From Lytechinus pictus (lineage: Eukaryota): DNA of 64,000 nucleotides. This document shows, one piece after another, positions 3,067-64,000 of this stretch. The DNA is taken from contig NC_087247.1 in assembly GCF_037042905.1 (NCBI RefSeq), positions 13,454,001 through 13,518,000 on the forward strand, read 5' to 3'. The number at the start of each line of letters is the position of its first letter. Within the stretch, counting starts at the first letter, position 1. The position numbers and the translations under genes are program-made. The notes beneath the pieces were generated by a model. That model made no database searches and was not told where the DNA came from. It saw only the letters and a program-made list of their open reading frames with translations.

Positions 3067-3572
3067 GTAAATATTATATGCATGTAAAAAGAATAGTTGA
3101 AGTTGATCGACAGTGCAGTCCCGTCGTGACAGTGCAGTGCAGTTTGCGCTTGACGCCGTGGCTTTAAGTTTCGGTACTCTATAGTATACTATAGCTACTC
3201 TCGTCTCTAGCGATAGCCCGACCAGTACCAGCTCAGAGACAGAGGCCAGAACCTGTGCGGAGCGCGGGGCGACCGCTTTCGAATTTCGTGAATGGTTCTG
3301 TGTGTGTTTGAGTTTTGTCAGACGTGTCAATCAGATATGATTATTTACGTCTGGGACCGACCTTAGTTTAAGTTTAATGTCACCATCCGAAAGACGTGAC
3401 CAGGGCTCGAACCTCTGAATCAATTTGTAACTTTCCCACATATCTCGGATTACCGGCGCACGCAACAACGCCCAGTTCTGTTGACTCGAAATTGAATAGA
3501 CTACGTTTATTGTTATATTTTACTTTGACCTGTTGACCAAGTGATAAGTTACATTAGACAGATAGTGAGATC

Positions 3573-4697
3573 ACACTCACCATTGGATAGCTGACTTTCT
3601 GAGTACTTAATAGGACCCAACGCGTTGTATTGGACGGATCCATCTCCAACACCAGCCAAGTAACATCAGGCGTTCCGTAAGGCAGTGTCCTCGGGCCAAT
3701 GCTCTTTCTCATCTTCATCAATGACCTGCCAGAGTATCTCTCCAACAACTCAACAGTAAGGCTCTTTGCTGATGATTGCATGGTTTATGCCAACGTCAAG
3801 ACAGAGGAAGATGCCATTCGTCTCCAAGAGGACCTTGACTCCTTGGGAGCATGATTGGCTGATGGAATTCAATCCACAGAAGTGTCAAGTACTTCATGTC
3901 ACAAATAAGCGCAAACCTATCATCAAGCCTTACTTCATCCATGGACAGACTATATCTGATAAAAATACAGCAAAGTATCTTGGAGTTGAGCTGCAGAGGA
4001 ACCTCAGCTGGAATCAACATATAAATGCTGTAACCAAAAAGGCCAACTCCACATGTGCCTTCCTCCAGAGAAATATCCGGCCATGTCCAAGAAAGGTCAA
4101 GGAACTGTGCTACAAAGCTCTCCTGCAACCAATCATGGAGTATGCCAGCATAATATGGGACCCTCACACGCAAGCAAATATAAAAAAGCTTGAAATGGTG
4201 CAGCGACGCTATGCACGCTTCGTCTGTAATGACCACCGCAGAACAAGCAGTGTAGCAGCCATGCTGAAACAGCTCAAATGGCCAACTTTACAAGAGCGTA
4301 GGGCACAGGCCAAGGTGGTGATGATCTACTGTATTACCAACTCACTCATTGACATCCCACCTACCTTCCTCACTCCATCCACATCCATGCATAGAGGTCA
4401 TTCTCAGAAGATCTTTGTTCCCTTTGCCAGAACACTTGTCTACCAGAGGAGCTTCTTCCCAGATTCTATAAGACTTTGGAACTCCCTCCCCAACAGCACA
4501 GTTAATTGTACCTCTCTACACATCTTTAAACAAGAGGTACAAAAGACCCAGCTCCGTTAATAACGGTGGTTGTTTTTACTTGCACGCCGTAAGCAATTTT
4601 TTATCGAATAATGTACATACACTTGCACGCTGCACTTCACCAGTACGACAATACACCAGACGGTGGACTGTACTGTTTCCAGAAGAAGAAGAAGAAG
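3573..4697 (+). mobile_element. 5'-truncated CR1/L2-group LINE (RT C-terminal half), in DNAJC9 intron 1
   Basis: RT motifs TSGVP*GSVLGPMLFLIFINDL and RLFADD; EFNPQKC, KYLGV, RSFFPDSIRLWNSLP; (GAA)n tail; possible GAGATCA TSD; stop and frameshift present. Confidence 0.9.
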
Positions 4698-19815: not shown

Positions 19816-22339
19816 CTGTCCAATACAATACAAATAAAATTCAGGACGAAATGTGTTATCAACATGAAAATCTATTCCCGGTAAACAAAATTATTTTCAT
19901 TTTATGAAGTTCACTCTAGTAAAATAAATCCACATGAAACGTTCCCGATTTCAAAATGAAATTTTACCAAGAATGTTGAAAAGTGATTTGTTATTGAGGT
20001 ATCCAAAAATGAATTGAACTTTTACTATTTATGATTTTTCTTTAGGATTATGGAAAATCTTGGGGTTGACCCTGCATGCTTTCATTTGGGTGGGTGTTGG
20101 AATAATTCCTCTCAATAACAAGATAATAGCTGATATGGTGATTTTCAAAGTCGGAAAAAGTTTGCCATCAATTTCAATCCACTTTACAACATTCTACCAA
20201 GTTTCCATCTGAAGGGGGGGGGGGGTGGGGGCAATTATTACTTGGGAATTGCACATTAATAAAGGATGTTTAGAACCAAAAGAATCATCCATTCATTGGA
20301 AAGAATGGATGACATTTTACAGAGAATAATTTTGCTTTACAAATTTGAATAGCATTTTTGGTCACGAGAGAAAAGCTCTCAACTAAGTAATGTGGTGCAA
20401 ATTGTGATGTGATACCAGGAAAATTATTCCATTTTATAAAAAGTTGTAGTAAAAAGGAATGAACTTGATAATTTGCAAAGCTCAATGGGGGATTAAACTA
20501 GACCCACTGCAAGCCAAAATATGACATTTCAGGAAGGGGAGATCATAATGGGTATTGAGGTCACACAAATGCATGAATACAATATAACAAAGCAAGAATT
20601 TAGTTTTCAAAGGATTTATTAAAAAAAAGTTCTTTAAAAAAAAATGACCAGCAGCCAAGAAGATTCATTCAAGTATAGAGGTTACCAAAGCAAATGACCT
20701 CTTTTCATGGAGCAAACCCTATCCCCTCACAAACTGACTAGCAGCCTGATCTAAGCTGGGATCTTCTTGACCAGATCACATGATCATGACGCCACTACCA
20801 ATTACCCATTTTTAAGTGTGCAGGGCGGGGCACTGGACACTGTCATGCATGATATACCCCATCCTTGATGCAGGTGCTTTATTTTCAAGTTCAATTATAC
20901 CCTGCATAGCTGAGGGTATGGAAGACAATGCATTGATTTTCCAAGCAATTTTGTGTTTGTTTGGGGGGAACTTCTCCCACATCATCTACATTTTCCCCCA
21001 CCCCCTACCTTTTCTCTTCCCTACCAAATGAATTGGCGTGTTAATCTCCTTTGTAGTCAATTCACCCTTGGACAATACTACCACCTTATTGCCTTTAATC
21101 TGCTCCCTATCTCATTAACCCCCTCCTCCCCTCTATTCCCCCTCTTTCTACAAGTTTACCTGTGGATCCACCAATTGCTATCCCTTTCCATACCTCCCTG
21201 TACTGTCTATCAAGGGGAGAATTTCATGAATATTCATATCAGTGATTTTCAGTCAAATGTTATAAGCTACTGTAAATCAATGCATCTGATTGGCTGAAAG
21301 CAAATCAGTGATAATCATTGATAAAAACTCTTCATGAAATGCTCTCCATATCCTGCCAATCTTTCTTCATTTCACATCCTTCCAACATTTATTCTCCATG
21401 ACTGATGTGTTCTAAGTAATTTATGATAATTTTATTACATTTATAAAAAAGATGAATATGATCAATCTTTGTCAAAATTCCTTGTTTTTTTATATAAATT
21501 ACATATACTTATAATTCTATTATTTTCATAGTCTTTATTCGTTTTTCTTCATTTTTATTTCAGTTTTACAAATTTTTCATTAATTCAATCGAGGGGGGGG
21601 GGCTCTTTTCAATTGAGCAAATGGAAGATTTACAATTTTACAAATAAATACACGCTTTTCTGTACATGATGCAATTGTGTTCCTATGAACTTCAATGAAC
21701 ACTGTTTTTTGGTGAAAAGGAACCAAAAATGGAGAATTTGATGTTTGTTTTTTTGTTTTTTTTCTGTCAAGGGGACACCTAATGCTTGTGCTTGCAGACA
21801 ATATTCATCACGTCTTTCACATAACTCTGAGAGATAAGGCAAGGGGCAGTTGGAAAGACATGGCTTGTGAATCTAGACCTAATGGGTTAATCCTCAACAT
21901 AGGCTCATCCAGAGGATGTGCACTTCATAATCCCACAATGGTTTAATAATGGCCCATCAATCATAACAAAACAATGCGTGTATTCTAGTTGTGAAGCACA
22001 ATGTCAAATTTCAGAGACGCCACCTGATAAAATGTCTGAATACTAATGTAGGAAATCATTCCTTCAAGCAAAATGGTCAATAAAAAGCAATGTCACATTT
22101 CAGAAATGACAATAAAAAGTCAGAAATTCCTTTCACACTGGGATGTAGGAAACCACTTCTTTTGCAAAAGGAAATTGCCCTATCAAATTTCCCTGACAGG
22201 TTCTGAATGGATGTAAGGAAACAATTTCTTCTGCAAAAGGCACAAAGACAGTTGGAACAATCTGCCAGGAGAGGTCATCCAATAACACTCCTTACCTACA
22301 AAAGTTAACTTAAAAACTGGGTTAACAATAGGCTAGAAT

Positions 22340-23350
22340 ACCCATGCCACACTTTCAATCTATGCGAGGATACCGTTGATGCTCAGAGAAACCTCCCACT
22401 CTGGCTCCTTCTCGTAGGAAATGTCACCATCCTTTATTCACAGTGGATGAATCCCAAACTTGAACCAATTTGTTTAGGTTTCTCCATAAAACAGTGCCAG
22501 TTTGGATGAAATAAGTGATCTAAGCACAGTAGAGAACTTAAGTAAATTTGAAGACGCCTTGATCACCAAAATAAGATATGCCAAGTTGCATCAAATGCCG
22601 GTGACACGACATTTGCTCCTGCGACAATTGCTCTGGTCTTAATATCTTAGAGGGCATAGGATTAGAGTAAGGATTGTAATAGAGTTTTTGGTTCAGATTA
22701 ATGTAAAGATTATGATTAGGGTTTATTTAGTTTTGGAGGTTAGGTTTTATGTTTCGTTTAATGTGCAGATTTTCCATCGGAGCAATTGTCACTGGAGCAA
22801 ATGTCATGGAACCCAAATGCCTTCCAAAATAAAGCAACCACTCTAACCAAGTGAAAAAAAATCAAAATTCTCGTTGACACAAGACATGACATTAAATGTT
22901 CTGAGAAAAAGTATCAGATGATTCAATGATTGAATCAAAAAACATAAATTGGAGAATTCAAAAGGCTGACTATCAGGTAGATCACTGCCCTATCCACACA
23001 CCAAAAGGCGAAAGAATAGCCAAACACCATCTCAAGTCAAGCCCCAGAACCTGGTTAAGAAACTCCAACTTCCCTGAGGTGAAAGACGTGCAAGTTCCCA
23101 TGAACGATTTTTAGATGAAGGGATACAGATGTCGTACTGGATCGTTTCCATGTGAGGTCAAAGTTGGGGATATGACCAGAAATAATCAACTAGATCTAGA
23201 TCCACCAAGAATTGTTCTGACACAACAAATAGGCCAACACACTTGTACAAGAAGAATACCAAAGAAGTCAATTCCACAAGACAAAAGTTTAGCTGGCATG
23301 AGCCATATATATCAGAAAACCATCATGTCTCTCAATTCATACCACCTGTA
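22340..23350 (-). pseudogene. Highly decayed DIRS/Ngaro-like (RNase H plus tyrosine recombinase) coding remnant; second copy ~31780-32500
   Basis: Minus-strand fragments HFLREGA...ID*K in copy 1, and LREGA followed by a frameshifted KTM/GDQ*K in copy 2, resemble the HSxRRGGA...GDWKS recombinase motif; many frameshifts. Confidence 0.35.
22600..22813. mobile_element. MITE with 8-bp TSD (Merlin-like GG termini)
   Basis: CAAATGCC|GGTGACACGACATTTGCTCC ... GGAGCAAATGTCATGGAACC|CAAATGCC; empty site in the paralogous copy at ~31995-32010. Confidence 0.85.
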
Positions 23351-26300
23351 ATGGCACCAGAAATCAGTAAAACAATCAAATACAAAGACAACTCATGAAA
23401 CATTACCATTTGAATGTCCAATAGAAAATATGTGAAATATGAGCTGGAAAAACTCCATTCCTTCAGTCAGTACTTGGGGATTTTCACATTACCAGACACC
23501 AGATACAAATATTTCACATGCGGTTGAAACACATTTCTAGAATTCAGGTATGCTCTTTTCATACACTCATCAACATTTCCTTTCTGCCCTTCTTTGTGCA
23601 GACACAAGTGGTTGCTTAGGCCTGGGTATATTCAAAGTGCAACTAGTCCTTAATCAGTCTTGATCAATGCCTCCGAGTCGCAAAGTCCTCTCAGCTACAC
23701 TGCTCCATTTATGAAATTAGACATCCAAGCAAAAGGTCCATGAGGGGAAATACGAAACACTGAATAAGCAACACTCCTGTATAATTCCATGAAAACAACT
23801 GACAATTTGACATTGCGCTCCTGAAACTAGATTCAAGACTAACATGTATTGGTATGGTTGATTTAGCGTTTTGTCCCCCCTTTTACACATTGTGGAAAAA
23901 CCATTGAAGCACACAATCCTCATAACAATGGGTGAAAACTCAATACTTTACTTTTGATTTTTAAGTGAATATATATTTTTTGGGCAGACGAACCGATATT
24001 GGGTCACAAATCACATCATTCCAAGCAGCAGTCCATTATCTCTACACATTGTGTGATAACGTGATGAATACATGCTTGCACAAACATGAGTTTTATAGCG
24101 AACGGGGAGAGGATCAACAAAATCCATTCATATGAGTCCATCCAAAAAGATGAACATGTACAGAAAAGGGAATTATATTGTAAACTTATTACCACTTTCT
24201 CATGTGGTTCTGCAATTATTTTTTTTTTTAATGTAATTGAAATTTATAAATATAATCACAAATTGTCTTATCATCATATCAGTCATGGTGAATATCGTGT
24301 TGAGAGGGTGTAAAAAAAGATGAATTCAGAGTGACAGCTTGAGTGGATAGTACAGGGAGGTACAAGAGACTGCAATTCATGGATAAACAGATAATACTGG
24401 TATTTTCAAGTAGAAACCAAAGAGGAGGGTGGAGTAATGGTATTGTTTTTATGGATTTTCATGAAAAGAATTTCATTCCAAAAAGTAAAGAAAATGCCAT
24501 GAATTAAATAAGTGCAATTTAGATATTTCTGCCCAATATTTCTATATTTACCCTCAGAATACCATAATAATTGCTGGAAAACCGTTTGCATTTGTCTCAC
24601 ATACTCTAGGCTACGCAAGATATCATTGAAATCATCAATAAAGCACTTACATTAAGGAAGCTGTATGCCATGCACAACAGTGTCCAATGCCCTTCTCTGC
24701 ACACTGAAAAACAGATCTGTTGGTAGTGACATCACTAATTGTGTGATTCTGGCAGGAAGATCCCAGCTCAAACCAGACAGCAAGCCATGTTTGTGAGGTC
24801 TAGGGCCTACCCCAGCAATCAATGAGGTCAACTGCCATGGTCCTCCAACTTGAATGAATCTTCTCGGCTGCTGGTCTTACATTTTATTCAAGAAAGAAAA
24901 AAAAATGATGAATACAAATCAAGTATAATTATGATACAGACAATAGTACATTACAGGGCAAGTCCAAGCTATCTGACACAACAAACTAAAGAGGTGTTTC
25001 ACAAAGATTTAAGTGTGTGATTCAATTCACTTTTGAATTTACACTTGCACACGGAAAATAATGGGTCACAATACTGGTTGGATCACGCTCAGAGGACTCA
25101 TACGCTGGTGCATACGAATCAATAAGACTGTGCATTAAATATTACATGCACACTCACACTTAGGCATGACTTTTTAAATTGTATTTATTCACTTGTGAAA
25201 CACTTTTCAGAGTTGTTTTGCTAGCTTCATAAACATTTTAAAATCTAAAGTAATAAATTAAGTAACAAACGCTTTCAAACACTAGCCTATATAGAGTGGA
25301 ATTTTTTTCTCTAATAAAATATTAGGGCCATGAATAATTAAGAGAAACTAAATAATTTCTTAACTGCATGCAGTCGAAGTTAATACATTCACCATTGCCA
25401 GACTAACACACATACAATTAAAAATAATAACCTCATGACCTTTGCCATTGTGACCAAAAAATATGTAATGAGATCTTTACTCACATATGCATTCATGAGC
25501 AAAGTTTAAAATCGATCCCTGAATCAAACCTGAAGTTGTCGCAGGGCAAGTGATATTTTCAGGTATACAATGAACCAATTCTTTGCTAATCACAAGAACA
25601 ACAAATTTTTGGATACAAATTGATATCTGTGACCTATGACCTAATAACAACTATATGTGAGTAAGTCATTGTCAGCAATGCCAACCCCTTGAAAAGAATG
25701 AAAACAGGATTTGTGGTGTAAAAAGAGCATTTTAAATTTTCTCCAATATCTGTAAAAGCATAAATTTAAGTAAAAAGTTATTTTCACTTGTATCTTTAAT
25801 TTCTATAAGCAAAAGTTATTCAAAATTGAACTGAAAAATATGCTTTAATGAATAGATTGACCAAAATAAGACTTGGGTATCTTCGAGGCTGGAATGATGA
25901 AGAGCTAAATTTCCCCCTTAAAGTTCTCGGCAGTTGATTGTGCAAGCATGATGAAAATCAATACACATGTCAACCATGATACATGTATAATCTACAAAAT
26001 TGTATGTATGATTGCTCCAAAATTATTCAAGTTTAATTCTTCATCAATTAATAATGCTAATTACTGCATAAAATCAGAATTTTTGCTTGAATCTATAAAA
26101 AAAAGCTCTTAAAGTACTGATATGTTTTTGTTTGGAGACTCTTTGCTGGATTCAGATCAAACACACAACAAAGAATAATTGTTATCAAAATGCTCTATTA
26201 TGTATTTTATTTTTTGCAATTTGTTATGTATTTCTTTGTTTTCATTTTTTTAATGATGCAAAAAAAAATTAATGACACAGTTATGAATTTTGGCTAGAAA

Positions 26301-26640
26301 TAGAATTTGCATTGGATTTTTACAGTTCATGAAATAAAGGCTTTTCTTAGCAATTTGATGTCTGACATGTAACTACATGTTTTATAATTTTGGAACTGCA
26401 GACCCAGGAGTTGTAAATTTGGTCTCAAACGTTGCGCAAGATTTGCTTGTTTGTTTTTAAGTCTTTTTAGGGTTAGAGATTAATAGCACCACACATATCA
26501 TTCTCTGTGCATTTGATCTATCACCCTCCTTTGAGTAACAATTGACCAAATTGGACAGAACATATTAACAACATTCATGGAGAATATTATAAAGGTATTG
26601 TGCACAGAAGTTGGGAGGGAGAAATGTTTGTGTTAAGAAA

Positions 26641-26730
26641 TTCTACGACAAGTAGATCCAGGGTAAAAAACCAGAGATAAAACACAAAAGGCAAAAACTC
26701 TGGAAAACCTTTGGATCCACTTTTGCAGAC
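26641..26730 (-). ncRNA. Conserved ~90-nt RNA hairpin (copy 2 at ~36062-36150)
   Basis: Minus-strand stems TCTGC/GTAGA, AAGTGGATCCA/TGGATCTACTT and CCAGAG/CTCTGG with G:U pairs; stems identical between copies, differences confined to the loop. Confidence 0.5.
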
Positions 26731-29370
26731 TAGTTAACACAAGAATTCTCCACAAATACATTCAAGGCTTGATTACCAAACAATTCTAAGCCTCACAATA
26801 CTTGGAAACATTTCCAACATTATGCACAAATCCTTTTTTTTTCTAGTAAGTATGCCCTACATTGTATGCATCCATTAATGAAAGAACATATAATTGAGAT
26901 ACAGATAATAGTTTGGACCTGCCCCGTGGATCCATTATCAAACACATACAAATGTGTTCATGAGTAGCAAATGCATATAACCTCACTGGCCATGTAAATT
27001 GTCCTATTTAAACAAATCACTGATTTTGGGTAAATTAACCTTTTTTTTCTGTTTTGAATCATTCAAATGTGACTTTAACATCAGCATAAAAGGAAAGTGG
27101 AAACTGTCCACTTTCTCAAATCATATACCATAAAGTTTTTAAAAACTTATTTTTTCACATACCATAAATTGTGTAAATGGGGCAATATATATGGCAAGCA
27201 AAGGTAAAGTCACATATTAAATAAAATAACATTTTTTCAATATATTTTACCTATTTGGTTCATTCAATTTGTTTGATAATAAATAATTTGTGGATGCCCG
27301 TTTACTGGACTAAATGCCCCTTTGTGTCCTTGGAAATTGTTGCCGTCTTTTGTAATATTCCCCACTCATAATTCAATAAATAAGAGTTCCCTAAAGAAAA
27401 ATGGAAAAAATGTGGCTGTAAAATTTGATTTTTTATTTATGTGAAAAAATGCATACCAAGTCAATATGCATAATTGTATTTTTGTATACAACCTCCAAAT
27501 AATAAATGTAGAGATCTGACCGTTTGCTTCTGAAACTATGGCAAAATTCCCATACTCATCCAGACATTCCATGTAGATGATGATTTCAAGATTGGTGTCA
27601 TGTCCTTGACTCTGGTAGACTACATGTAGCTCTCTCATTTATACTGGAAGATGGTTCACACAAGATAGGGGATGTAGCCATTCTGTACACGGAGTGATAT
27701 GACTGCAGATGTAAAGTGAAAGAACAAAATATATTTCAATAAATAAATAAATAAATAAATAAAATTTTCAGAAACATTCATCATACTATAAAACATGTAC
27801 AAATGAAATGAATAGAGGCTTACATTTGGACAAATGTAATGCCAGTATACTACACCAAAACACTTATGAGGGCAATTTTATTTAGAGGTAAGTACCATAA
27901 CATAACCTCAAAAACTCCTCACAAATACACATGTATCACCTGATTTGGTGTCATCTAGTTTATTGATTTGAATATACAGTATGGAGATTGCGATAAAATG
28001 GATTGTTTGTTTACATTCATACATTTCAAAATTTAAGAACAAAATTTCTCCAAAATTGTTCCTTCTGAGAAGAGCCTACTATATGCAGATGTCGCAACTG
28101 AAATAATATATAACAGAAATCATCTTGCAAAATCATAAATTTTTTTTGATGGTTCAGGGGCATAGTGAGGAGGCAGGGGGGAATTGCAAAAAGAACGAAA
28201 ACACAAGGGTAAAGAAAAAACAATATGAAAGCAAAGGGGAAAAAAATGAAAGATTTATTTTTTCTCAACAGCATAAAAACCTCTCTCTCTCTATTTGATA
28301 AAGAAATGAATCTGAAATTGGTAAACAATTTGATGACACAGTATTTGCTAAATCTATTATGAAACATCCACATTTTGAAACTTCAAAGTTCAACGTTTTG
28401 TTTGAAAAATAAATTCTTCTCCCTGTACACGGATCTACTCCTCTGTTTCACAAGGTAAATATGTTTAACATGACTAGATTTTTAAAGAGTTTTATGTCAA
28501 ATCCAATGCCTCTTTTGGATCATAACTCACCTAAACATCAATAACTGCTCACACTATCCATTCCTTGTAGATGATGATTTCAAGATTGGTGTCATGTCCT
28601 TGTCTGTGGTAAACTAGCTCTCTTATTCATGCTGGAAGATGGTTCACACAAGATAGGGATGTATCCATGCTGTACATTGAGTGATATGACTGCGGATGTC
28701 AAGTGAAAGAACAAAATATTATTCTAACAACATTTTCTTTTAAAAACATTAATCGTACAATCAAAATTTAATTATGAAAGTATGAATAATGTTCCCTTTT
28801 TCTTCTAATTCATAACAAATAATTTCTACACTTGTGGTTAAAGTTGGTAAACTCCATCACTTCTGCCACCACTTCCCATGACTACTTCTCCAGCTATTCA
28901 CCTCATAAATGGACAACCAATTTTTAATTCACTCTTGAAGTTACTCATTAAAAAAGATGCAGGCATAAATTAATGCTGTAATATATCTGAACAAAATGGT
29001 TAATTAAATGCAATAAAACTTCATTCCAAATCTTTGGCTTGCACATCCATTTCTTGTCCTGTTTTCCTAACTTAATTTGACATTTTGAATGTCAATACAG
29101 TTTCTTAATCATTCAAAATGAGGGGTGGAATATGATTCATAAAAATTATTCCTAAATTTGATAAATCACAGAGGATTCTGTTGTTTGCAGATAAGAAAAA
29201 AAATTATTCCATGCATCATCTTTGTCAGTTTAACAATTTTATAACACATCATTCTTGCTAAATATATCATGATAACTTCATAGGTTCAACGCTATGTATA
29301 GGAAAGAAAGTCATCTCCGTGTACACCGATCTATTACTCTGTTTAAATATGATTAATTATGATTTAATTA

Positions 29371-30108
29371 ACCCCCCAAACCAGCCGTCTTCGCTCCGGG
29401 GGGTCTTCTAGCATCCGAATGGGTCGATATACAAAAAAAAAAAGATCAATTTCGAAAAGATTTTCGGGTCTCTCGCACCCTCGCGACCTGGCAAAATTGT
29501 CAGAAATTGAGCAAAATGATTTTATTTTAAAAAAGCCCCCCTAAACCCCCCCAAACCAGCCGTCTTCGCTCCGAAGGGTCTTCTAGCATCCGAATGGGTC
29601 AATATACAAAGAATATAGAAGATCGATTTCGAAAAGATTTTCGGGTCTCTTGCACCCTCGCGACCTGGCAAAATTGTCAGAAATTGAGCAAAATGATTTT
29701 ATTCCAAAAAAGCCCCCCTAAACCCCCCCAAACCAGCCGTCTTCGCTCCGAGGGGTCTTCTAGCATCCGAATGGGTCAATATACAAAGAATAAAGAAGAT
29801 CGATTTCGAAAAGATTTTCGGGTTTCTTGCCCCACCCGCGACCTGCCAAATTGTCCAAAATTGAGCAAAATAAGTATTTTCCAAAATAGCCCCCAAAACC
29901 CCCCAAACCAGCAGTCTTCGCTCCGAGGGGTCTTCTAGCATCCGAATGGGTCAATCTACAAAAAATAAAGAAGATCGATTTCGAAAAGATTTAAGTCTCT
30001 TGCCCCACCCGTGACCTGCCAAATTGTCCAAAATTGAGCAAAATAAGTATTTTCCAAAAATAGCCCCCAAAACCCCCAAAACCAGCCGTCTTCGCTCCGA
30101 GGGGTCTT
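29371..30108. repeat. Tandem repeat, ~176-bp unit, ~4.2 copies
   Basis: AAACCAGC(C/A)GTCTTCGCTCC recurs at ~29378, 29553, 29730, 29905, 30078. Confidence 0.95.
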
Positions 30109-30301
30109 GGTTTTGTTGCTCTTGGCAACAATTGTATTTGGGAGTAACTTGCCCACCTAGGCATTTACAGTTTGCCCCTCCCCCTTTTTTTCTTCCCTAC
30201 CATGTGACTTTGGTTGTTGATCTCTTTGTAGTCTCTCTATTCACCCTTGAACAAAACCACCTTATTTCCTCTAGTCTGCTCTCTTCTTCAATACCACCTC
30301 T

Positions 30302-30503
30302 TAGTCTATGATCCAGGCCGAGACTACAGCTTTATTTTTTGCTGATGTTAAACACAAGCCATGTGTCTGATGCAGCGAGACTATGGACTCTGATTTGGTG
30401 CAATTTTTTATAAAACGCACCAGATATTCACTGGATCAGACATCGCTTTAGTTCAGCATAACGGCAAAAATAGAGCTGTAGCCTCTGCGTGGATGATAGG
30501 CTA
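30302..30503. mobile_element. MITE with TAG...CTA termini
   Basis: TAGTCTATGATCCA...GACTACAGC and GCTGTAGCC...TGGATGATAGGCTA; absent from the paralogous copy. Confidence 0.6.
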
Positions 30504-31460
30504 TCCTCCCCTTTATCCCCCTCCTCTCCTTCCTGCAAGCTTACCAGTTGATCCACTAATCATGATCTCTCCGTACCTCCCTGTACTATCCATCCATGTC
30601 TGCCTTCATGACACACCCTTGCAACATTTACTTGCCATGACTAATACAATGTTCTAAGTAATTTCATGATACCATTTTTTTTTATCTGTATGTTTTTTTT
30701 TTTTCTTTTTCCTTTTCCATGATAATGACAATTTTGATTTGTTTTCCTCTATCATTTATTCATTTAGTAAGTTTTTTTTTTTTTTTGGGGGGGGGGCCTT
30801 TTTAAGTGAGCAAATGGAAAATAGAACAACAATTTCGCAAATAAATACACCCTTTTCCATACATGATGCAAACATGTTTTTATGAATTTCAATGAACACT
30901 GCAATTTGGTTGAAACATCTAAAGAGAATCCATTAAACATGGGATGTAAATTTGATGTTTTTGTTTTTCTGTCAAAAGGGGGGCACAAAATGTTAATTTG
31001 ATTTTTTTTTTCTGCCGAGAGTGCCAAATAATAATTTAAAGGGTTTCTTTTTTTTTAAATCTTTTGTTTTCTGTCAAGGGGGCACCAAATGGTTGTGTTT
31101 GTATATTGTATCCATCACTTCTTTCTGCACAACTCTGAGAGATAAGGTAAAGGGCGTTGGAATGAAATGATATGTGAATCTATTGAAGGGTTAAACCCTC
31201 AACATAGATCTGTCCCGAGGAAGTGCACTTTATATCCCACAATGATTTAATAATGACCCATAAATCAATAGCCCATCAATCATAACAATACAATGCATGT
31301 TTTCTAGTTGTGAAGTGCAATGTCAAATATCAGAGAAGGCACCAAATAAATTTCCTGAACTCTATCCAGACTGGATGTTGGAAACCATTTCTTTCGCCAC
31401 TGACAGTTGGGACAATAAACCAATTACACACATTAACTTCAAATAGAAACTTTCAGAAAT

Positions 31461-31690
31461 GACCGGTGTGTTGGCTCAGTGACCAGTGTGTTGGCTCAGT
31501 TGGAAGAGCATCCGTCTCACAACCGGGAGGTCGTGGGTTCAAACACCTAGCCCTGCTAGGTGTTCAACAATTAAAGGGATAGAGCCTCGTCGATCTGGTG
31601 CTGCACAGCGGCTGCCAGGCCCACGATCAATTGGGCAAAACAAATTTTCGGAGTATTTCATTTCTGGTGTCTATTTCGAACAATAAAATA
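31461..31690 (+). mobile_element. tRNA-derived SINE (5' 20 nt duplicated)
   Basis: GTGTTGGCTCAGTTGG A box, GGTTCAAAC B box, CAATAAAAT tail. Confidence 0.8.
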
Positions 31691-34600
31691 AGGATTTTCA
31701 AATGGGCTCATAATAGGCGAAAATGCCCCTTAGTATCTGCACCATTTGTAGATGCTGACTAGGAAGCTCAAGGAATTACAAGCCTCTTTCATTGATCACC
31801 ATAGTCTTGACACTCGGGTCTCGAAGAGCTGTCCCACTCTGGCTCCTTCTCGTAGGCCACACCGCCATCATTAACACCGTGGGTTAATACATGACGAGAA
31901 CCATGAAAAAACTCTGGATTGGACTGAATAACTTTTAAAGCCCATGTGAAATTTAGAAAACCACAGGATCAACCGAACCATGTAAGCAAAGTTCCATCAA
32001 ATGCCTTCCCAAGTACAGCAAGCCCTCTCAAATACATCCAGCCAATTAAATAAGTGCAATCCTCATTCACATGGGATACGACTTACACTGTTCCCAAGAA
32101 AAAAATACCACACAATTCAATGACTGAAAGAGCATCATGGAAAATCAAACAGAAAATTGAGAAATGAAGGCTATCGATCTGGTGGATCACTGCCAGATGC
32201 GTAGGTGGATGAACAGCCCAACATCGACATATGACAAGCCCCTGGACCTTGTTGAGAAACTTCAACTTCACTCAGACATGATCAGAGGGTCCATAAACAA
32301 CAGGAAGGAACCACTTCTACGATGGTCTGCAAACATGCTTTGTATGTCATTACAAGGACAGTGAAGGACTTGCAAGTTCCCATGAGATACTTCAGATGAG
32401 AAAATGATCATCTGGAACGAGATCCACTGAGAATTCCTCCAACATCACCACAAAGAGGCCAACACTCTCAAAGGATAGCAGAGAAATCAATTCCAGATCA
32501 AAGGAACAGATGCTACATCAGGATTTGAAAGTCCTGTAGCTAATGTGCAACTTGCATGATGTTGTGGAGAGCTTGGGATATCATACATTAGATGAAAAGA
32601 AGGCCTGGTCGGACAGTACTTGAGGATCAGCACCATACAAGATTTCAAAATAAAAACAAAGATGTCACATGCAATTGAAAAAAAATACCAGAAGTCAGCA
32701 GAGCTCTCTTTAGGTCAACAGTTCCTCTCTTCACTTTCTTCGCGCAGAGTTAAACCTGGGTCAACTTGGAGTGCAAACCGGTTAAAGATTGATCTTGATC
32801 AATCAATGCCATTGAGCCCCAAAGCTAAACTGTTCCATCGATGAAATTCGACAAATGTGCACAAGCCCCATTACATCAAGGAGGGTCAACTGGAAACACA
32901 ACAACAGCAAGGCTCTTGAATAATCACTTGAAAAGTAAATGACAATTGCTGGCAAGAAAGAAATCAAAATTTGACATTGCACTTGTGAAACTAGATTCAA
33001 CACTGACATGTATTGCTGTAATTGATGGAGCACACCCCCCCCCCTTTTTTGTGGAAAAACCATTGAAGCACACAATCCTCACAAAAATGGGTAAAGGTTT
33101 ATACTTTACTTTAAATGCAAAGTTTTTGATGGACAAACCGATATTGAGAATCTACTTTCAGTTTCATCACAAATCATATATATCATTCCAACGCGGGCCG
33201 TTATCTCTGCAAGTTATGTGATGACATGATGAATACATACATACTCCCACAAACATGTGGTTTATGGGGAAAGGATCAAAACGACTGTTTCAAATTGGTC
33301 CGAAAAATTAACATGTACAGAAAAAGGGAAATTTATTGCAAAATAATTTATACTTCTTCCTCTGCAATAAATGTAATAATAATTAGATTAAAGTTTGTAC
33401 ATTTTTTATAAATTGCCTTGTAAAAGAATTTGTTATGTCTTGGCACATTCTATCAGTCATGGCAAATATCATGGTGTAACGGTGTGAAACAAAGATAAAT
33501 TTCGAGCAGATAGTACAGGGAATTAAAAGGCAGACAATAATTAATGGATCAACTGTTAATACTATTGTAGAGATGTGAGGAGAAGGGAAAGCAAAAACAT
33601 GAGGGGAGGGTGGAGTAAGGAAGAAAGAAGATTAGGGAATAAGAAAGGGATGGCTATAAGGGGAATAGATAGACTACAGTAAAGATCAACAGATCAAGAC
33701 ACATAGCAAACAAAATGATATTCATGTAGGAATGGAAAAGATAAATAGTAATAGTAAAGGGCAGGTCATTTATTTAAAGTGAGACAGAAAAGAGCAATGG
33801 GGGTTTTTTCCCTACAAATTTATCAAAATTGCATTTATAAGGATTGGTATTGTTTGAAAGAATTTCAGGAAAAGAATTACATCCCAAAGATTAAAGAAAT
33901 TGTACTGAATCTAAAGAGTTCAAATGGGGCAACAAGTGGGCAAATATCCTGATGTGAGGGAAATAGCTGCCCAATATTTCCTCGACAATTATTACCTTTA
34001 GAATAATTGCCGGAAAACCAATTGCATTGTCTTGCATACTCTAAGCCACACAAAATATCATTAAATTCATCAATAAAGCACTTACATTATGGAAGCTGCA
34101 TACCATGCTCAACGGTGTCCAGTGCCCTTCTCTGCCCACTGAAAAATAGGTCTCTTGGTAGTGACGTCACTAACTGTGTGATTCTGGCAGGAAGATCCCA
34201 GCTCAAACCAGACAGGAAGCCACGTTTGTGAGGTCTAGGGCCTACCCCTGCAATCAATGAGGTCAAATGCTCTGGTCCTCCAACCTGAAAGAATCTTCTC
34301 AGCTGCTGGTCTTACATTTTTGTTTCACAAAAGAAAAAAAAAAAAATCATGAATACAAAGCGAATATATAGTAAAAACAATAGTACTCTACCGGGCAGGT
34401 CCAAGCTATCTAGTATTAGAGGGGTGTTTCACAAAGATTTTATGTGTGACTAAAAATTGCTCTTTCATTTCCAACTGGTGCGGAAAATAGGCCTTTGGTT
34501 GGATCATACTTAGAGATCACTCTCAACTATGTATTAATCAATGAGACTGTGCGCTTAATATCCTAACGTAACAAAGACTTTTGGTCAGTTTTAGTCATTT

Positions 34601-34716
34601 GTGAAACACTCCCCAGAATCATTATAATAATAATAGTGTTGTTTTTATATAGCGCATTTCAGACCTGTAAGGACTCTCAATGCACTTTACTTAAAATAAA
34701 ATTATACATTGTAATT

Positions 34717-34917
34717 GGGCAATTCCATAAAATAATCAACCTTTTTGTACATCCGACCCCCATTTTTCTCAAGTTTTACTTCACTTCATAAACTGACCAA
34801 GTCATAGTCATTTGAGAGCATTACAGACTGTCAAAAGAACAAGAAATCAGAGACAAAAAAATGTCATGAAGGTCCCACATATGGGGGGTCGGACGTACAT
34901 ATTTTATGGAATTGCCC
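34717..34917. mobile_element. ~200-bp MITE with 4-bp TSD (same family as 15382-15578)
   Basis: AATT|GGGCAATTCCATAAAAT ... ATTTTATGGAATTGCCC|AATT. Confidence 0.85.
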
Positions 34918-37091
34918 AATTATAACTTAGAACAGTGGAAATAAACACTTAAACAACAAAAGCATTAATCAATTACATATGGCTTAAGTAAAATCTAATT
35001 GAATGCTTCATTAAAGAGATATGTCTTAAGTTGTGACCTTAAAATTCAATCGGATCATCCTAGTATCATAAACTTTTCAAGAATTAAAACTGATCGGATA
35101 ATATAAAGTCACTTTTTGAAAAGTCAATACTGTACTTTATTTCTTAATACCCATGTGATTCAGACCCTTTTTCATATATAGTTCATGAACCAAGTTGGAA
35201 GATGAACCCTATATGGTTCTATATAGTTCCCTTAAGACAAGATATATTTAAAAATTAGCTCTTTGATGCTAACAGTAAACTTTTTCACGAAAATGTATCA
35301 AATTAATAAATTTTTATCTTTTAGTTATTGCCAGATATAGAATATATTACACAACAAACTTCTAATACCCAGTAGTTCAAAATAATGACCTTGTTGACTG
35401 ATATGATATTCTTGCCATAACATGCAATGTCGCACTAGTAAGTATATATCTGGACCTTTGCTGTTTTTCGTTCATGTTACAGACATAATTGATTCCTCTA
35501 AAACATCAAATTTTATTCTGTATACCGAATATAATTTTGTCAAACGAAATTGAACAGGAATAGATTGAATTATCTAATAATCAACTTTGTTTGTTGCTGA
35601 TAGTCCTACACAAATAAGATAAGGGTTTATAACACTTAATACATGATATTCTGTTTATTAAAAGTAGCCTGTTTATTAAAAGTAACCTGCCAATTTTTGT
35701 AAACCTTGGTGTAATAATTGACAAAAAAAGACAGAACAAATTTATAATATTAATGGAAAAAATAAGTATTACAAAGCTATCAAGTGCAAAATTAAGGGGG
35801 GTGGGTTGTGTTGACAATTGAGTATATGAATATAACAATAACCCAATTCCATAATACATGTAGTTTATTTTGAGTAAATCAAGGAAAAAATAAAAAATAA
35901 TTTTGGGGTTCAAATTTTCATTCATTTGGGGAACTTTTGGGTGGAATTCCAAAATACAAATTACAAATAAGATGGGCTCATGTATAAGCAAACAATATCC
36001 CATGAATAAATCAATTTGGCCAACAGATGGACTTGGGTTACTTTCATATTCATGTACCCAATTCTACGACAAGTAGATCCAGGGTAAAAAACCAGAGATA
36101 AAACTCAATAGGGAAAAACTCTGGAAAACCTTTGGATCCACTTTTGCAGAAAAGTCAACACAATATCAAATTTAAAAAGTACAAACTTCATCAAGGTTAA
36201 TCTACAAACTAAGTTAACTCTACAAATAACCTAAATGCCTAATTAGCACACCATTTTAATTCTAATTAAGCATAAGCCTGACAATCACATATAATCAAGA
36301 TATAATAGCTTGGACCTGCTCCTTAGAGCTACACAAAAAATCATTGTACATTACCTAACAAAATGGGTTCATGAGTAGCGAGTGCACATGCGAATCTCAG
36401 AATAGTCAGAATTGATAGTAAAAATATTTTGGAAAATCAACATGTTTAAACCAATATCTGGTTCATTCACTTTGATTTACATTAACAGATATCTCCTGTA
36501 TCAAATAAAAGTCCTGAATTTGACTTGAAGATAATGGTGTTTGCTCCTCTAGACCCTGTTACACAATGGTTTGTGATCGATTGCAAATATAAAACAACTA
36601 TTCTGATTGGTTCCTGTTGTATGCTACAACTATCCTGATTGGCCCCCATGTTTTGTAGATATTTGGTGTCAAGTGCTCAGCTATGCAGATCACCTCTCCC
36701 AAGAATATTTAGAATATGTTTAACCAAAACAGAGAGTTGAGATAATGACTGGTGTCAATAGCAGATCCCTGGCAACTACATCTACCATGAATACTTGAAA
36801 GATTATTAACATAAGATGCAGATCATGCAATCTGTCAGATGCGCTGGTCAGCAAGTTGTCTCTCCCAGGCAAGTCCCATGATGCGTCGGTGCTGATACCC
36901 AGATTCTGCTGAGCGCATAGGCAAAATGATCAGTCAGCGCACTAGTTAAATATGCAACCTGGCTCTGCAAGAGCAGTGCATGAACTACATTTTGATCTAG
37001 ATTGGGGATGATTAAACGGGGATACGATTTTCCAAGATCTATCAATCCTGGTATCAATTTGTATAACTTTTTTATAAGTAGATTATAACAC

Positions 37092-58450: not shown

Positions 58451-59233
58451 ACATTTTATTGTTGAATGGTCATAACAAAGCTTATCGCATGCCCTTACAG
58501 AGTGGACTTGGGCGGGGCAGTTGCCCACAGAATGACAGATGTCATGAAATCTTTAATTTATTTTAAAAATCCCAGCATCATACAAAAGCGTAGAGCAAAT
58601 CCTTTAATTTGATCTTATTTTCCAATGCTTTAATAAAAAGAAGGTCAGTCACTTTTCTTCTTTACACATTCCACATTGTGCCACCTCTATGGCCTTTAGT
58701 TTAAGACAGCTTCTATAGTGTTTTATACGAAGCCCCAAACCGGACATTTTTGACAACCAAAAAAAAAAAATTATCACGTACGTACGTAGTATTATTACGT
58801 ACGTACGTGATGATTATTACGTACGTACGCAGTATTATTGCGTACGTACGTGATAATTATTACGTACGTACGTGATAATTATTACGTACGTACGCAGTAT
58901 TATTACGTACGTACGCAGTATTATTACGTACGTACGTGATAATTATTACGTACGTACGCAGTATTATCACGTACGTACGCAGTATTATTACGTACGTACG
59001 TGATAATTATTACGTACGTACGCAGTATTATTACGTACGTACGCAGTATTATTACGTACGTACGTAGTATTCTAATTTTCATTGGTCTATGGAATCCGAT
59101 ATTCGCCGAATGTGGCCGACATCGGCACCCCGCATTGGCCCAACCAACGTCAGCTTGCTAGCTGGGACCATGGTTGGACCATAGTCATGCTGGTGATGAT
59201 CATGACTTTTCATCGATTATAGGGCCTATATAA

Positions 59234-61874: not shown

Positions 61875-64000
61875 CTATATATAACCCACAATATTCATAT
61901 GATAACCATTTCATTTGTTCTCGTCATCAGGCTGTGTTTTCAATTAAACCATTCCTTTCAGAAACTGCTAGAAACACATTGGGGAAAGGACAATTAAAGG
62001 CCTATTATGTTAGTGTTTTGGCGAGACAGTTTTTTTCAAAAATGTACCCACACGCGACACTGGGATGAGCCCCTATTATTTTACCACCCTTTTGAAATTG
62101 CTTCGTTCTCTGCTTAAATTTGAATATGATATGGTATTAATTGATGTAAATTAAGTGAAGATGTATAGGTGTTTAAAAAAAGAAAAACTATTTGAAGAGG
62201 CTGGTATTTAAAGGGAAATTCTATGCGGGAACAATCAAAGCAGAAGGCCTATTGTAGGCCCACATAAAAATTTAAAGCCTGCGGGCTTCGCGCTAGCGTG
62301 ATCAGATTTCAGTAACTACCGGTATTTGAATTCATGTATGACCTTTTGGGAGATAACATTACGTACGTACGTAATAAATACTGCGTACGTACGTGATAAT
62401 ACTGCGTACGTACGTAATAATTATCACGTACGTACGTAATAATACTGCGTACGTACGTGATAATACTGCGTACGTACGTAATAATTATCACGTACGTACG
62501 TAATAATACTGCGTACGTACGTAATAATACTGCGTACGTACGTAATAATTATCACGTACGTACGTAATAATACTGCGTACGTACGTGATAATACTGCGTA
62601 CGTACGTAATAATTATCACGTACGTACGTAATAATACTGCGTACGTACGTAATAATACTGCGTACGTACGTAATAATTATCACGTACGTACGTAATAATT
62701 ATCACGTACGTACGTAATAATACTGCGTACGTACGTAATAATATTACGTACGTACGTAATAATACTGCGTACGTACGTGATAATTTTTTTTTTTTTTGGA
62801 TGTCAAAAATGTCCGGTTTGGGGCTTCGTAGTTTTATGAAGATGATTCGATATTTTAGCCCAAAACTATGCTACAACCCGTTGCTAGTACCGGGAGTGTA
62901 TAATTACGCAAACATTCGTATATTGAGATTGAGCTACACAACTCGTTCTTTATTTAAAATCGTGCTTAAATTATCCGCTTCTCAGATTGGAATATACAAA
63001 TTTTCAGCTCGCGCTTCGCGCTCGCATCATTTCTGTGGCAAAACCCCATACTTTTCATGATTAAATAGGTGAATAGAATGTCCCTTTTTCAGGACTAAAC
63101 GTCAAAAGAACTCCCGCTTCGATTTGCAATAATCTTTTGCTGGATAAAATCTTGTTCTTTATTACAAACGTCCATTAAACTGTCATTTTTTTCAGATCGA
63201 AATATCAAAATTTTAAGCTCGCGCTTCGCGCTCGCATCTATTGTCTTTTTAGATACCCATCTTAATCATTGGTACCAAAAATGCATAGAATATCAAGTTT
63301 TCTGGTCAGAATATAAAGAAATTTCAGTTCGTCCTAGGCACTCGCATTATCTGTGTAGTGAAATATGTATCCTCCTCATGAGTTACTACAAACAGTCCTA
63401 AACAGGCACCTTTTTCTTGTTTTCAGGTCAGTATACTAAAAAATTTCAGCTCGCGCTTCGCGCTCGCATTAACTTGTGGGTGAGATATGTGTTTCTATCT
63501 CATGAGTCATATAAGTATATATATATATATATATGCATATGTGTGTGTGTGTTTGTGTGAGTTTGTTTGTTTTGTGTGATATTGAGCGCCTTTGGAAAGT
63601 TGATTCATGATTTTGCCCCCCAAATCTTAAAAAAAGGATCGACGCCCCTGTGTATATATATATATACATATAGTAAAAAAAACTTGTATCTCTATTAATA
63701 TACAAAAGTATTGGCCTCATCGCAATAAAAGGGTTATTACACGATATTTTGAAATCGCACATAACATGCATACTCTGTGCTTGTTTCTTTCTTTAATAAG
63801 TTTTTCAATCTCTCTCTATACATGTTTTAGAAAGATTATATGTTTAGATTGATGTATATTTCTGTTATAATGAGATATGTTTAAGTGGACTTCAGGGAAT
63901 TGTCGTTCGCAGCAAGGGGAAAGGGGGGGGCACATTCGCGATCTGCTGTTGTGAAAAACAATTTTTTTTTTTCATTAACATTTCATGAAAACTATGAAAA

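What the first reader, a model, noticed from the sequence alone, without database searches (positions are those of the whole stretch)
20615..24880. ~4.2-kb fold-back with minus-strand G:U bias and a poly(A) signal at its base: candidate hairpin-RNA (endo-siRNA) locus
Seen: 20645-20860 is a diverged reverse complement of 24660-24876, and patchy pairing continues inward (21870-22015 with 23800-23925; weaker to ~22200/23570). By hand count over the outer ~215 nt, about 17 transition differences give G:U pairs on a minus-strand RNA and about 4 on a plus-strand RNA; the inner segment shows the same direction. A minus-strand AATAAA (20620-20615), followed by U/GU-rich sequence, lies ~25 nt past the end of the 3' arm. 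I found no TSD or transposon-type terminus. Known: old, G:U-rich long inverted repeats in Pol II transcripts characterise Drosophila hpRNAs and pseudogene-derived endo-siRNA hairpins. Inference: a transcribed dsRNA kept at the RNA level. Caveat: transcription-associated mutation asymmetry could give part of the bias.
Basis: partly seen in the sequence, partly recalled or inferred. Interest (0 to 1): 0.85.

Follow-up and report, generated by a model that had tools for sequence, protein, structure and literature searches.

The report
Old fold-back, candidate hairpin-RNA locus
A real but old 4.3-kb inverted repeat in a non-coding, probably minus-strand-transcribed unit has changed in a way that keeps RNA base pairs, so it is a credible but unproven hairpin-RNA (small-RNA precursor) locus, and its arms are copies of a repeat scattered through the genome.

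Summary
20630-20970 is a 73% reverse complement of 24548-24894. A second, collinear pairing (21956-22014 with 23799-23862) is also significant. The excess of minus-strand G:U is real: 33:14 in the outer arms, 45:16 with the inner pair.

New facts change the picture.
- The right half lies in an old tandem duplication (copy B at 30137-36400), about 61% identical overall with islands of 82-93%.
- The arm is one copy of a roughly 325-nt dispersed, expressed repeat family.
- The right arm carries an exon-like block.
- Transitions in the conserved islands run 32:3 in the direction that keeps pairs in a minus-strand RNA. Less conserved parts give 28:17 and tandem-repeat controls 20:18. Local strand skew predicts about 54%.
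- Stranded RNA-seq shows one-direction reads from about 20620 to 24940, with gaps. Many reads come from other copies.
- No small-RNA run was listed. The AATAAA is one of ten on that strand in the unit.

Verdict: the hairpin-RNA reading is partly supported (about 0.4). A decaying relic is the main rival. Three other first-stage notes on this same stretch were checked.

The parts
20630..20970 (-). Left arm (3' arm of a minus-strand RNA). It is an inverted, decayed copy of the roughly 325-nt family element, and both splice-like motifs are lost.
24548..24894 (-). Right arm (5' arm of a minus-strand RNA). It is a copy of the family element and is 89% identical to copy B's arm.
24651..24875 (-). Exon-like block inside the right arm. 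A pyrimidine tract plus AG lies at 24877-24876 and GTAAGT at 24650-24645. A 74-codon frame is open in copies A and B.
21814..22022 (-). Inner island 1, 84% identical between copies A and B. Its core 21956-22014 pairs with island 2.
23803..23952 (-). Inner island 2, 82% identical between copies A and B. Its core 23799-23862 pairs with island 1.
21193..21204 (+). 12-nt motif CCTCCCTGTACT. Its perfect inverted partner is at 24349-24360, and it is also present in copy B at 30576-30587.
24349..24360 (-). Inverted partner of the 12-nt motif.
22023..23802 (.). Spacer (loop). It holds a very high-copy MITE-like insert at 22600-22813 with 34-nt terminal inverted repeats.
20615..20620 (-). AATAAA just past the left arm. 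It is one of ten on this strand within the unit, and a run X1 contig reads through it.
30137..34321 (-). Copy B of the unit, from an old tandem duplication. Island 1 is at 31121-31341, island 2 at 32967-33110 and the right arm at 34005-34321. It has no left outer arm.
29370..30108 (.). Young 177-bp satellite (4.2 units, 92% matches). It sits where copy B's left arm would be.
26637..26731 (-). Conserved local hairpin upstream on the same strand, 93% identical between copies A and B by my count. Its twin is at 36053-36152. It may belong to the same transcription unit.

Best explanation
The locus is a non-coding transcription unit, most likely read on the minus strand, that contains an old local inverted duplication. 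The duplicated segment is about 1.4 kb per side, with a spacer of about 1.8 kb. Its best-kept part is a copy of a roughly 325-nt dispersed, expressed repeat family. The right-hand copy is exon-like. The left-hand copy lies antisense to the family. In a minus-strand RNA the two outer arms can form an imperfect duplex of about 340 nt: 284 pairs, 30 of them G:U, with helices of 29, 25 and 23 bp. The conserved islands have accepted almost only the transitions that turn a Watson-Crick pair into G:U in that RNA. I infer that pairing in the minus-strand RNA has been under selection. The most likely role is a long hairpin RNA that Dicer cuts into endogenous siRNAs, with the antisense (left) arm supplying guides against the family's sense transcripts. 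Shown here: the repeat, the duplication history, the substitution bias and its controls, the fold, and one-direction RNA over most of the unit. Inferred: the RNA strand (library convention), both arms on one molecule, dicing, and targets.
For: The inverted repeat and inner pairing are significant. Minus-strand G:U against plus-strand G:U is 45:16. That compares with 66:60 in five other inverted pairs of the window (p 0.007), and with about 54% expected from local skew (p 0.001). Polarised transitions, counted as minus-strand A>G and C>T against the reverse: right-arm stem 11:1, right-arm tips 10:0 where both outgroups agree, inner-island tips 11:2. Together that is 32:3. The left-arm lineage plus the poorly conserved middle give 28:17 (p 0.004), and private changes in tandem repeats give 20:18 (p 0.0003). 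The bias follows the genome strand in both halves, not the orientation of the element. The islands are 82-93% identical between copies A and B, against 61-73% elsewhere, and the left-half island is kept as well as the right-half one. The arms-only fold gives -388.5 kcal/mol on the minus strand and -333.8 on the plus strand, where the longest helices are 17 bp or less. The arms also pair in the full 4.3-kb fold. In RNA reads, 21840-24943 is almost wholly first-mate-on-plus. Run X22 has ten otherwise perfect reads in that direction at 20921 on the left arm, and the signal falls off near both ends of the fold-back. The family is multi-copy and expressed in the sense direction, so trans targets exist. 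G:U-rich hairpins are effective RNAi triggers (PMC9263138). Known hpRNAs arise from inverted exon fragments of multi-copy families, inside non-coding RNAs, and get amplified in tandem (PMC10317233).
Against: No small-RNA data exist for this locus. No read, joint or contig links the two arms. Coverage is near zero at 21452-21645 and 24168-24555, and left-arm coverage is low and two-directional. All reads at 24615 and 23562-23563 carry letters that differ from the window, so much of the RNA comes from other copies or a divergent allele. The strand call rests on the usual dUTP convention, not on a calibration. Copy B has no left arm nearby, yet its right arm is equally conserved and shows the same bias. 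The duplex has about 15% unpaired positions, and the middle of the arms has decayed to 65-70%. Islands 1 and 2 are only about 72% complementary to each other, although each is 82-84% conserved. Transversions are only about halved relative to the tolerated transitions. The left arm shows more disruptive changes than the right (30 against 15, not significant). The finding was picked from a very large scan, so some of the bias may be a selection effect.
Confidence: 0.4

Rival explanations
1. The fold-back is a decaying relic with no hairpin function. An old inverted segmental duplication happened to include a functional, exon-like or regulatory family element. The right-hand copies stay conserved for their own sequence-specific role. 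The left copy drifts. The G:U excess reflects transcription-coupled strand-asymmetric mutation plus ascertainment by the scan. Any dsRNA that forms is incidental.
For: Copy B's right arm is as conserved as copy A's (89%) without a left partner. The left-arm lineage has about twice the disruptive changes of the right. The middle of the arms has decayed to 65-70%. The minus strand is G+T-rich across 22-60 kb, with a composition index (G x T)/(A x C) of 1.21 there and 1.41 inside the unit. The less conserved parts still show 28:17. RNA coverage is discontinuous.
Against: The local skew predicts only about 54% of transitions in the tolerated direction, against 91% seen in the conserved islands. 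The bias differs between conserved and unconserved parts of the same unit (p 0.004), which a uniform mutational cause does not predict. Tandem-repeat controls in the window show 20:18. The left-half island is conserved between copies A and B as well as the right-half one.
Confidence: 0.3
2. The unit is a non-autonomous DNA transposon or foldback-type element with long, imperfect terminal inverted repeats and subterminal motifs. RNA reads and sister-species contigs then come from other copies of the family.
For: Most laid reads are 90-95% alike and only partly fit. Sister-species DNA contigs cover 20094-25137 but not 25138-25700. Short motifs recur in inverted orientation in both halves. The window is rich in MITEs and other repeats.
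Against: There is no target-site duplication and no shared terminal motif beyond the family element. No ORF in the unit hits any Pfam family. Homology between copies A and B runs about 2 kb past the right arm, to 26978/36389, so the fold-back is not the duplicated unit. A transposon origin does not predict a genome-strand-tied transition bias.
Confidence: 0.1
3. The right arm is a true exon of a lineage-specific, fast-evolving multi-copy gene on the minus strand. It could be a last coding exon or a non-coding exon. The left arm is an inverted pseudo-exon downstream of it. At most it acts as a natural antisense, not as an intramolecular hairpin.
For: Acceptor-like and donor-like motifs are kept in copies A and B and lost in the left arm. 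The 74-codon frame is open in A and B, and the same frame is open in the outside copy L001, whose predicted protein is P0003. Of 21 differences between A and B, 11 fall at third codon positions, with 9 synonymous and 12 non-synonymous. RNA depth is highest over this block.
Against: No protein family was found. A search of 1.84 billion representatives gave only P0003, a metagenome ORF, plus two low-complexity matches. The word-based search found nothing and Pfam found nothing. No splice joint was listed. Coding constraint does not explain a one-direction transition bias, nor the conservation of islands 1 and 2.
Confidence: 0.12

Closest known systems
Drosophila hairpin RNA (hpRNA) loci such as hp-CG4068, Nmy/Tmy, hp-tHMG cluster, Dsim-hp58 and Dsim-hp88 (PMC10317233, PMC10292708)
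   Same: A long inverted repeat sits inside a non-coding Pol II-type unit. The arms derive from an exon-like piece of a multi-copy family. The unit is amplified in tandem. One arm is antisense to expressed family members.
   Different: Known hpRNAs are defined by Dicer-2-dependent siRNAs and by primary transcripts that rise in dcr-2 mutants, and neither could be tested here. Their arms are near-perfect and evolutionarily young. Here the arms are 73% identical (about 85% paired with G:U), separated by 3.6 kb, and older than a duplication whose neutral sites are nearly saturated.
Endo-siRNA sources from inverted pseudogene or repeat duplicates in mouse oocytes, and expressed inverted duplicates in mammals (PMC5398296; the mouse oocyte work is cited from my own knowledge)
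   Same: A local inverted duplication of a gene or repeat fragment is transcribed through both arms and gives dsRNA.
   Different: No small-RNA evidence exists here. The organism is an unidentified invertebrate-type genome.
Engineered G:U hairpin RNA transgenes (PMC9263138)
   Same: The duplex holds through many G:U pairs while the DNA is no longer a perfect inverted repeat, and such hairpins still trigger RNAi.
   Different: Those are designed, with all C changed to T in one arm and otherwise perfect. This one is natural and also carries mismatches and small insertions and deletions.
Long-TIR or foldback DNA transposons
   Same: Long imperfect inverted ends, no long ORF, a repeat-rich setting, and parts of it multi-copy.
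   Different: There is no target-site duplication or terminal motif. The tandem copy shares sequence well beyond the right arm. The substitution bias is tied to the genome strand.

Membership tests
hpRNA / endo-siRNA hairpin locus | Long inverted repeat whose arms can form an extended RNA duplex | tested here: met
   73% over 353 nt. The minus-strand fold has 284 inter-arm pairs, with helices of 29, 25 and 23 bp. The arms also pair in the full 4.3-kb fold.
hpRNA / endo-siRNA hairpin locus | [quoted passage not shown] | tested here: inconclusive
   One-direction reads run from about 20620 to 24940, but with two holes. No molecule links the arms, no start or end pile-ups were reported, and many reads come from other copies.
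hpRNA / endo-siRNA hairpin locus | Dicer-dependent 21-22-nt siRNA duplexes from the arms | not testable with these tools
   No miRNA-Seq run was listed for this sequence, and the single read-laying run was used on long RNA.
hpRNA / endo-siRNA hairpin locus | Arms homologous to trans targets (genes or transposons) | tested here: met
   The arm belongs to a dispersed family. A fourth copy lies on outside contig L001 (61-67% identity). At 24615, 18 sister-species DNA contigs (summed depth about 2400, against 20-48 for single pieces) and 22 RNA contigs pile up. Reads there run almost all in the sense direction.
hpRNA / endo-siRNA hairpin locus | Primary transcript and targets rise when Dicer/Ago2 is lost | not testable with these tools
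   This needs a mutant or a knock-down.
DNA transposon with long TIRs / foldback element | Target-site duplication flanking the two ends | tested here: not met
   The flanks at 20600-20630 and 24894-24930 share no direct repeat.
DNA transposon with long TIRs / foldback element | Whole unit present as dispersed copies with the same ends | tested here: inconclusive
   The interior is covered by diverged reads and sister-species contigs, but flank data are sparse. Copy B shares sequence beyond the right arm.
DNA transposon with long TIRs / foldback element | Transposase ORF (autonomous members) | tested here: not met
   Ten ORFs of the unit gave no Pfam hit. A non-autonomous copy would lack one anyway.
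SINE (for the 325-nt arm element) | Pol III head derived from tRNA, 7SL or 5S | tested here: not met
   No Rfam match at gathering score in the window. At E up to 1 in 20400-27000 the only match is a chance snoU85 hit elsewhere.
SINE (for the 325-nt arm element) | Dispersed copies with common boundaries | tested here: met
   Homology of the left arm, right arm A, right arm B and L001 begins at the GACCAGCAGCC end, and in the three window copies it ends near GCAATT; L001's contig stops about there.
SINE (for the 325-nt arm element) | A-rich or simple-repeat tail and target-site duplication | tested here: not met
   The tails differ between copies, and no duplication was seen.

The most novel reading that the evidence does not exclude
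This would be an evolutionarily old, tandemly duplicated structured RNA gene on the minus strand. It would comprise a miRNA-like hairpin (26637-26731) followed by a 4.3-kb long-range fold-back. Its helices would have been held by wobble-tolerant purifying selection for long enough to nearly saturate the neutral sites around them. That makes it a long-lived hairpin-RNA silencer aimed at a dispersed roughly 325-nt family, in contrast to the young, fast-turning-over hpRNAs known from Drosophila.
Probability: 0.25. Interest if true: 0.65.

Novelty: new member of a known kind. Interest (0 to 1): 0.5.

Why it matters
Hairpin-RNA loci are well characterised almost only in Drosophila, where they are young and evolve fast. 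A long hairpin outside insects, kept paired through G:U changes over a long time, duplicated in tandem and aimed at a dispersed expressed family, would show that this form of endogenous RNAi can be stable. The transition-direction test used here would also offer a sequence-only way to find such loci. If the locus is instead a relic, it is an ordinary old inverted duplication in repeat-rich DNA.

Tried and rejected
1. Coding exon. The 74-codon frame of the right arm gave no homologue in the word-based search. In 1.84 billion representatives it gave only one metagenome ORF, P0003, plus two low-complexity hits. Pfam gave nothing for ten ORFs of the unit.
2. More family copies. The metagenome scan returned only L002, which is 57% GC, has no DNA similarity and is spurious.
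3. Known RNA families. There were none at gathering score, and none relevant at E up to 1. The arm on its own has no unusual local fold (z 0.2 and 0.6). Islands 1 and 2 fold no better than shuffles.
4. Small-RNA runs. None was listed.
5. Compensatory change between copies A and B in the inner pair. Only one double change was found, at a CpG, which is weak.
6. Uniform transcription-coupled mutation as the sole cause of the bias. I rejected this as insufficient, because skew predicts about 54% and the bias differs between conserved and unconserved parts.
7. Biased gene conversion, CpG decay and GC-content relaxation. None of them predicts A>G together with C>T on one strand (my reasoning).
8. 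The poly(A) signal as evidence. The motif is too common.
9. Earlier notes searched by words and by sequence gave nothing further.
Full report
**Observation.**
The fold-back is real. A minus-strand self-comparison aligns 20630-20970 with 24894-24548 at 73.4% over 353 nt, E 1e-52. Further in, 21956-22014 pairs with 23799-23862 (score 24 against 10.6 +/- 1.6 in shuffles, z 8.5). A 12-nt motif is perfectly inverted at 21193-21204 and 24349-24360. All three pairings are collinear. The structure is therefore one old inverted duplication of about 1.4 kb per side, around a spacer of about 1.8 kb that has since taken up a high-copy MITE-like element (22600-22813). Pairing as far in as 22200/23570 was not confirmed. 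I found no target-site duplication or terminal motif.

**Setting.**
The right three quarters of the unit lie in an old tandem duplication.
- 20960-26978 (copy A) is collinear with 30137-36389 (copy B).
- Overall identity is 61%. Islands stand out at 21814-22022 (84%), 23803-23952 (82%), 24566-24894 (89%) and 26637-26731 (93%). Other segments are 61-73% identical.
- The inner pairing exists in copy B as well (z 10.9), so the inverted duplication is older than the tandem one.
- Copy B has no left outer arm. A young 177-bp satellite (29370-30108) sits exactly where that arm would be.
- The left arm matches copy B's right arm about as well as copy A's (73%).

**What the arm is.**
The outer arm is a copy of a discrete element of about 325 nt.
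- A protein-level search with the only open frame of the right arm found one real relative, P0003. It is encoded on an unrelated 696-bp metagenome contig, L001.
- At DNA level L001 carries a fourth copy, 61-67% identical. Its homology starts at the same end as the window copies and runs to the end of the short contig, near where theirs stops, and its flanks are unrelated.
- When reads were laid, sister-species DNA contigs piled up on the right arm. The summed word depth was 3,100-4,600, with 18 contigs at 24615, against 20-48 for single pieces.
- An RNA assembly of the window's species has 22 contigs at that position.
- The arm family is therefore multi-copy and expressed.
- Inside the right arm, 24875-24651 on the minus strand looks like an exon. 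A pyrimidine tract plus AG lies at 24877-24876 and GTAAGT at 24650-24645. A 74-codon frame is open in A and B. These features are conserved in B and lost in the left arm.
- Differences between A and B in the block are 9 synonymous and 12 non-synonymous, with 11 of 21 at third positions. That is weak evidence of coding at best.
- No protein family was found.

**The G:U bias.**
On the plus strand an A:C mismatch between the arms is a G:U pair in a minus-strand RNA, and a G:T mismatch is a G:U pair in a plus-strand RNA. My counts, given as minus-strand G:U to plus-strand G:U:

| Comparison | Count | p |
|---|---|---|
| Outer arms | 33:14 | 0.008 |
| Inner pair | 12:2 | 0.013 |
| Left arm against copy B's right arm | 34:9 | 0.0002 |

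- Five other inverted pairs in the window give 66:60. The fold-back's 45:16 differs from that at p 0.007.
- The minus strand of the unit's non-island interior is moderately G+T-rich. Its composition index (G x T)/(A x C) is 1.41, which corresponds to about 54% of transitions in the tolerated direction. Against that expectation, 45 of 61 has p 0.001.

**Direction of the changes.**
I polarised the changes with L001, and with the opposite arm, as outgroups. "Tolerated" means A>G or C>T on the minus strand, the changes that turn a Watson-Crick pair into G:U in a minus-strand RNA.

| Lineage or control | Tolerated : reverse |
|---|---|
| Right-arm stem | 11:1 |
| Right-arm tips of A and B, both outgroups agreeing | 10:0 (five in each copy; seven further sites conflict) |
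| Inner-island tips | 11:2 |
| Left-arm lineage | 15:9 |
| Poorly conserved middle | 13:8 |
| Private changes in the window's tandem repeats | 20:18 |

- In the left-half island the inner-island count is 4:0 in the plus-strand sense. The bias therefore follows the genome strand, not the orientation of the element.
- The conserved islands together give 32:3. That differs from the less conserved parts of the same unit (28:17, p 0.004) and from the tandem-repeat control (p 0.0003).
- A uniform mutational asymmetry should not differ between conserved and unconserved parts of one unit. A constraint on pairing in a minus-strand RNA predicts exactly this difference.
- Caveats. Transversions are reduced less than the disfavoured transitions. 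Numbers are small. The finding was chosen from a very large scan.

**Folding.**
- Arms alone: -388.5 kcal/mol on the minus strand (284 inter-arm pairs, 30 G:U, helices of 29, 25 and 23 bp). On the plus strand: -333.8 kcal/mol (257 pairs, helices of 17 bp or less).
- In the full 4.3-kb fold the arms pair on both strands: -1371.5 kcal/mol on the minus strand and -1211.8 on the plus.

- Two rRNA-depleted paired libraries give reads over 21840-24943 almost only with the first mate on the plus strand (depth 3-27, against 0-0.9 for the other direction).
- Under the usual dUTP convention that means a minus-strand RNA. The convention was not calibrated here. The splice-like motifs, the strand skew and the better minus-strand folds all agree with it.
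- The signal falls to under 1 to the right of 24943. To the left of about 20620 it fades.
- Run X22 has ten otherwise perfect reads in this direction at 20921 on the left arm.
- Against a single hairpin transcript:
  - coverage is near zero at 21452-21645 and 24168-24555;
  - left-arm coverage is low and two-directional;
  - no joint or contig links the arms, and no start or end pile-ups were reported;
  - at 24615 and 23562-23563 every read differs from the window, each with several further differences.
- Much of the RNA therefore comes from other family copies, or from a paralogue or allele about 93% identical to the window. A run X1 contig reads through the AATAAA site.
- No small-RNA run was listed.

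**Poly(A) signal.**
AATAAA at 20615-20620 on the minus strand exists. There are 165 such hexamers in the window and ten on the minus strand inside the unit, so it carries little weight.

**Interpretation.**
The best single reading is a non-coding minus-strand unit whose RNA folds back on itself and whose helices have been under wobble-tolerant selection. It would most plausibly act as a Dicer substrate, with the antisense left arm aimed at the sense-expressed family. I give this about 0.4.
- Main rival (0.3): a decaying relic whose right-hand elements are conserved for their own reasons. Supporting it are copy B's conserved but partnerless right arm and the faster decay of the left arm.
- Long-TIR transposon (0.1): fits poorly. 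There is no target-site duplication, and the homology between copies A and B runs past the right arm.
- True exon plus an inverted pseudo-exon (0.12): compatible with the hairpin reading, but does not explain the transition bias.

**Comparison with known systems.**
The architecture parallels Drosophila hpRNAs. Those arise from inverted exon fragments of multi-copy families, can sit in non-coding RNAs and are amplified in tandem. They are defined by Dicer-2-dependent siRNAs and by primary transcripts that rise in dcr-2 mutants (PMC10317233). Those defining features could not be tested here, so membership is open. G:U-rich hairpins do trigger RNAi (PMC9263138). This locus differs from known hpRNAs in its age, its imperfect pairing and its long spacer. 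The use of G:U asymmetry to call the strand of a structured RNA, and transcription-associated mutational asymmetry (an excess of A>G and C>T on the coding strand), are cited from my own knowledge.

**Verdict.**
If real, this is a new member of a known kind. Interest is moderate (0.5).

Noticed in passing
window 26630-26740 and 36050-36160, minus strand: A roughly 95-nt hairpin is kept at 93-94% identity in both tandem copies. It folds at -38.8 kcal/mol on the minus strand (z -6.6) and -29.9 on the plus strand. The three differences between copies A and B inside it all fall in the terminal loop, as in a pre-miRNA. It lies 1.75 kb upstream of the right arm on the same strand. There was no Rfam match.
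   Followed up: partly
window 22600-22813: A MITE-like insert in the spacer has 34-nt terminal inverted repeats (85%). It is extremely high-copy: sister-species summed contig depth is about 54,000, with RNA reads on both strands.
   Followed up: partly
window 20288-20430 and 21258-21451: Two further high-copy dispersed repeats flank or interrupt the left half. Summed DNA depth is about 33,000 and about 3,000, with RNA on both strands.
   Followed up: no
window 29370-30108: A young 177-bp satellite (4.2 units, 92% matches) sits exactly at the junction of the two tandem units, where copy B's left arm is missing.
   Followed up: partly
window 58726-59065 and 62490-62830: Two arrays of a 21-bp unit (ATTATTACGTACGTACGCAGT) lie in inverted orientation, 98% complementary over 342 nt and 3.4 kb apart. 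This is a far better-preserved fold-back than the one studied.
   Followed up: no
window 19900-25700 (RNA runs X21, X22): Among the places where reads differ from the window, T>C (plus strand) is the largest transition class in the raw RNA reads (52 and 43 places). It is the smallest, or joint smallest, in the contig sets (32 in run X1, 22 in the DNA run X11). This is the direction expected for A-to-I editing of a minus-strand RNA, but paralogues and alleles could not be excluded.
   Followed up: no
window 3766-4560, plus strand: A 264-aa ORF looks by eye like the C-terminal part of a non-LTR retrotransposon reverse transcriptase, so it is probably a LINE fragment. It was not searched.
   Followed up: no
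window 23250-23604 and neighbouring interior: The RNA assembly of run X1 holds a 378-nt contig at depth 48 that is only about 93% identical to the window here. Window-identical contigs have depth 4-5. A closer paralogue or a divergent allele of the unit is therefore the main expressed copy.
   Followed up: partly
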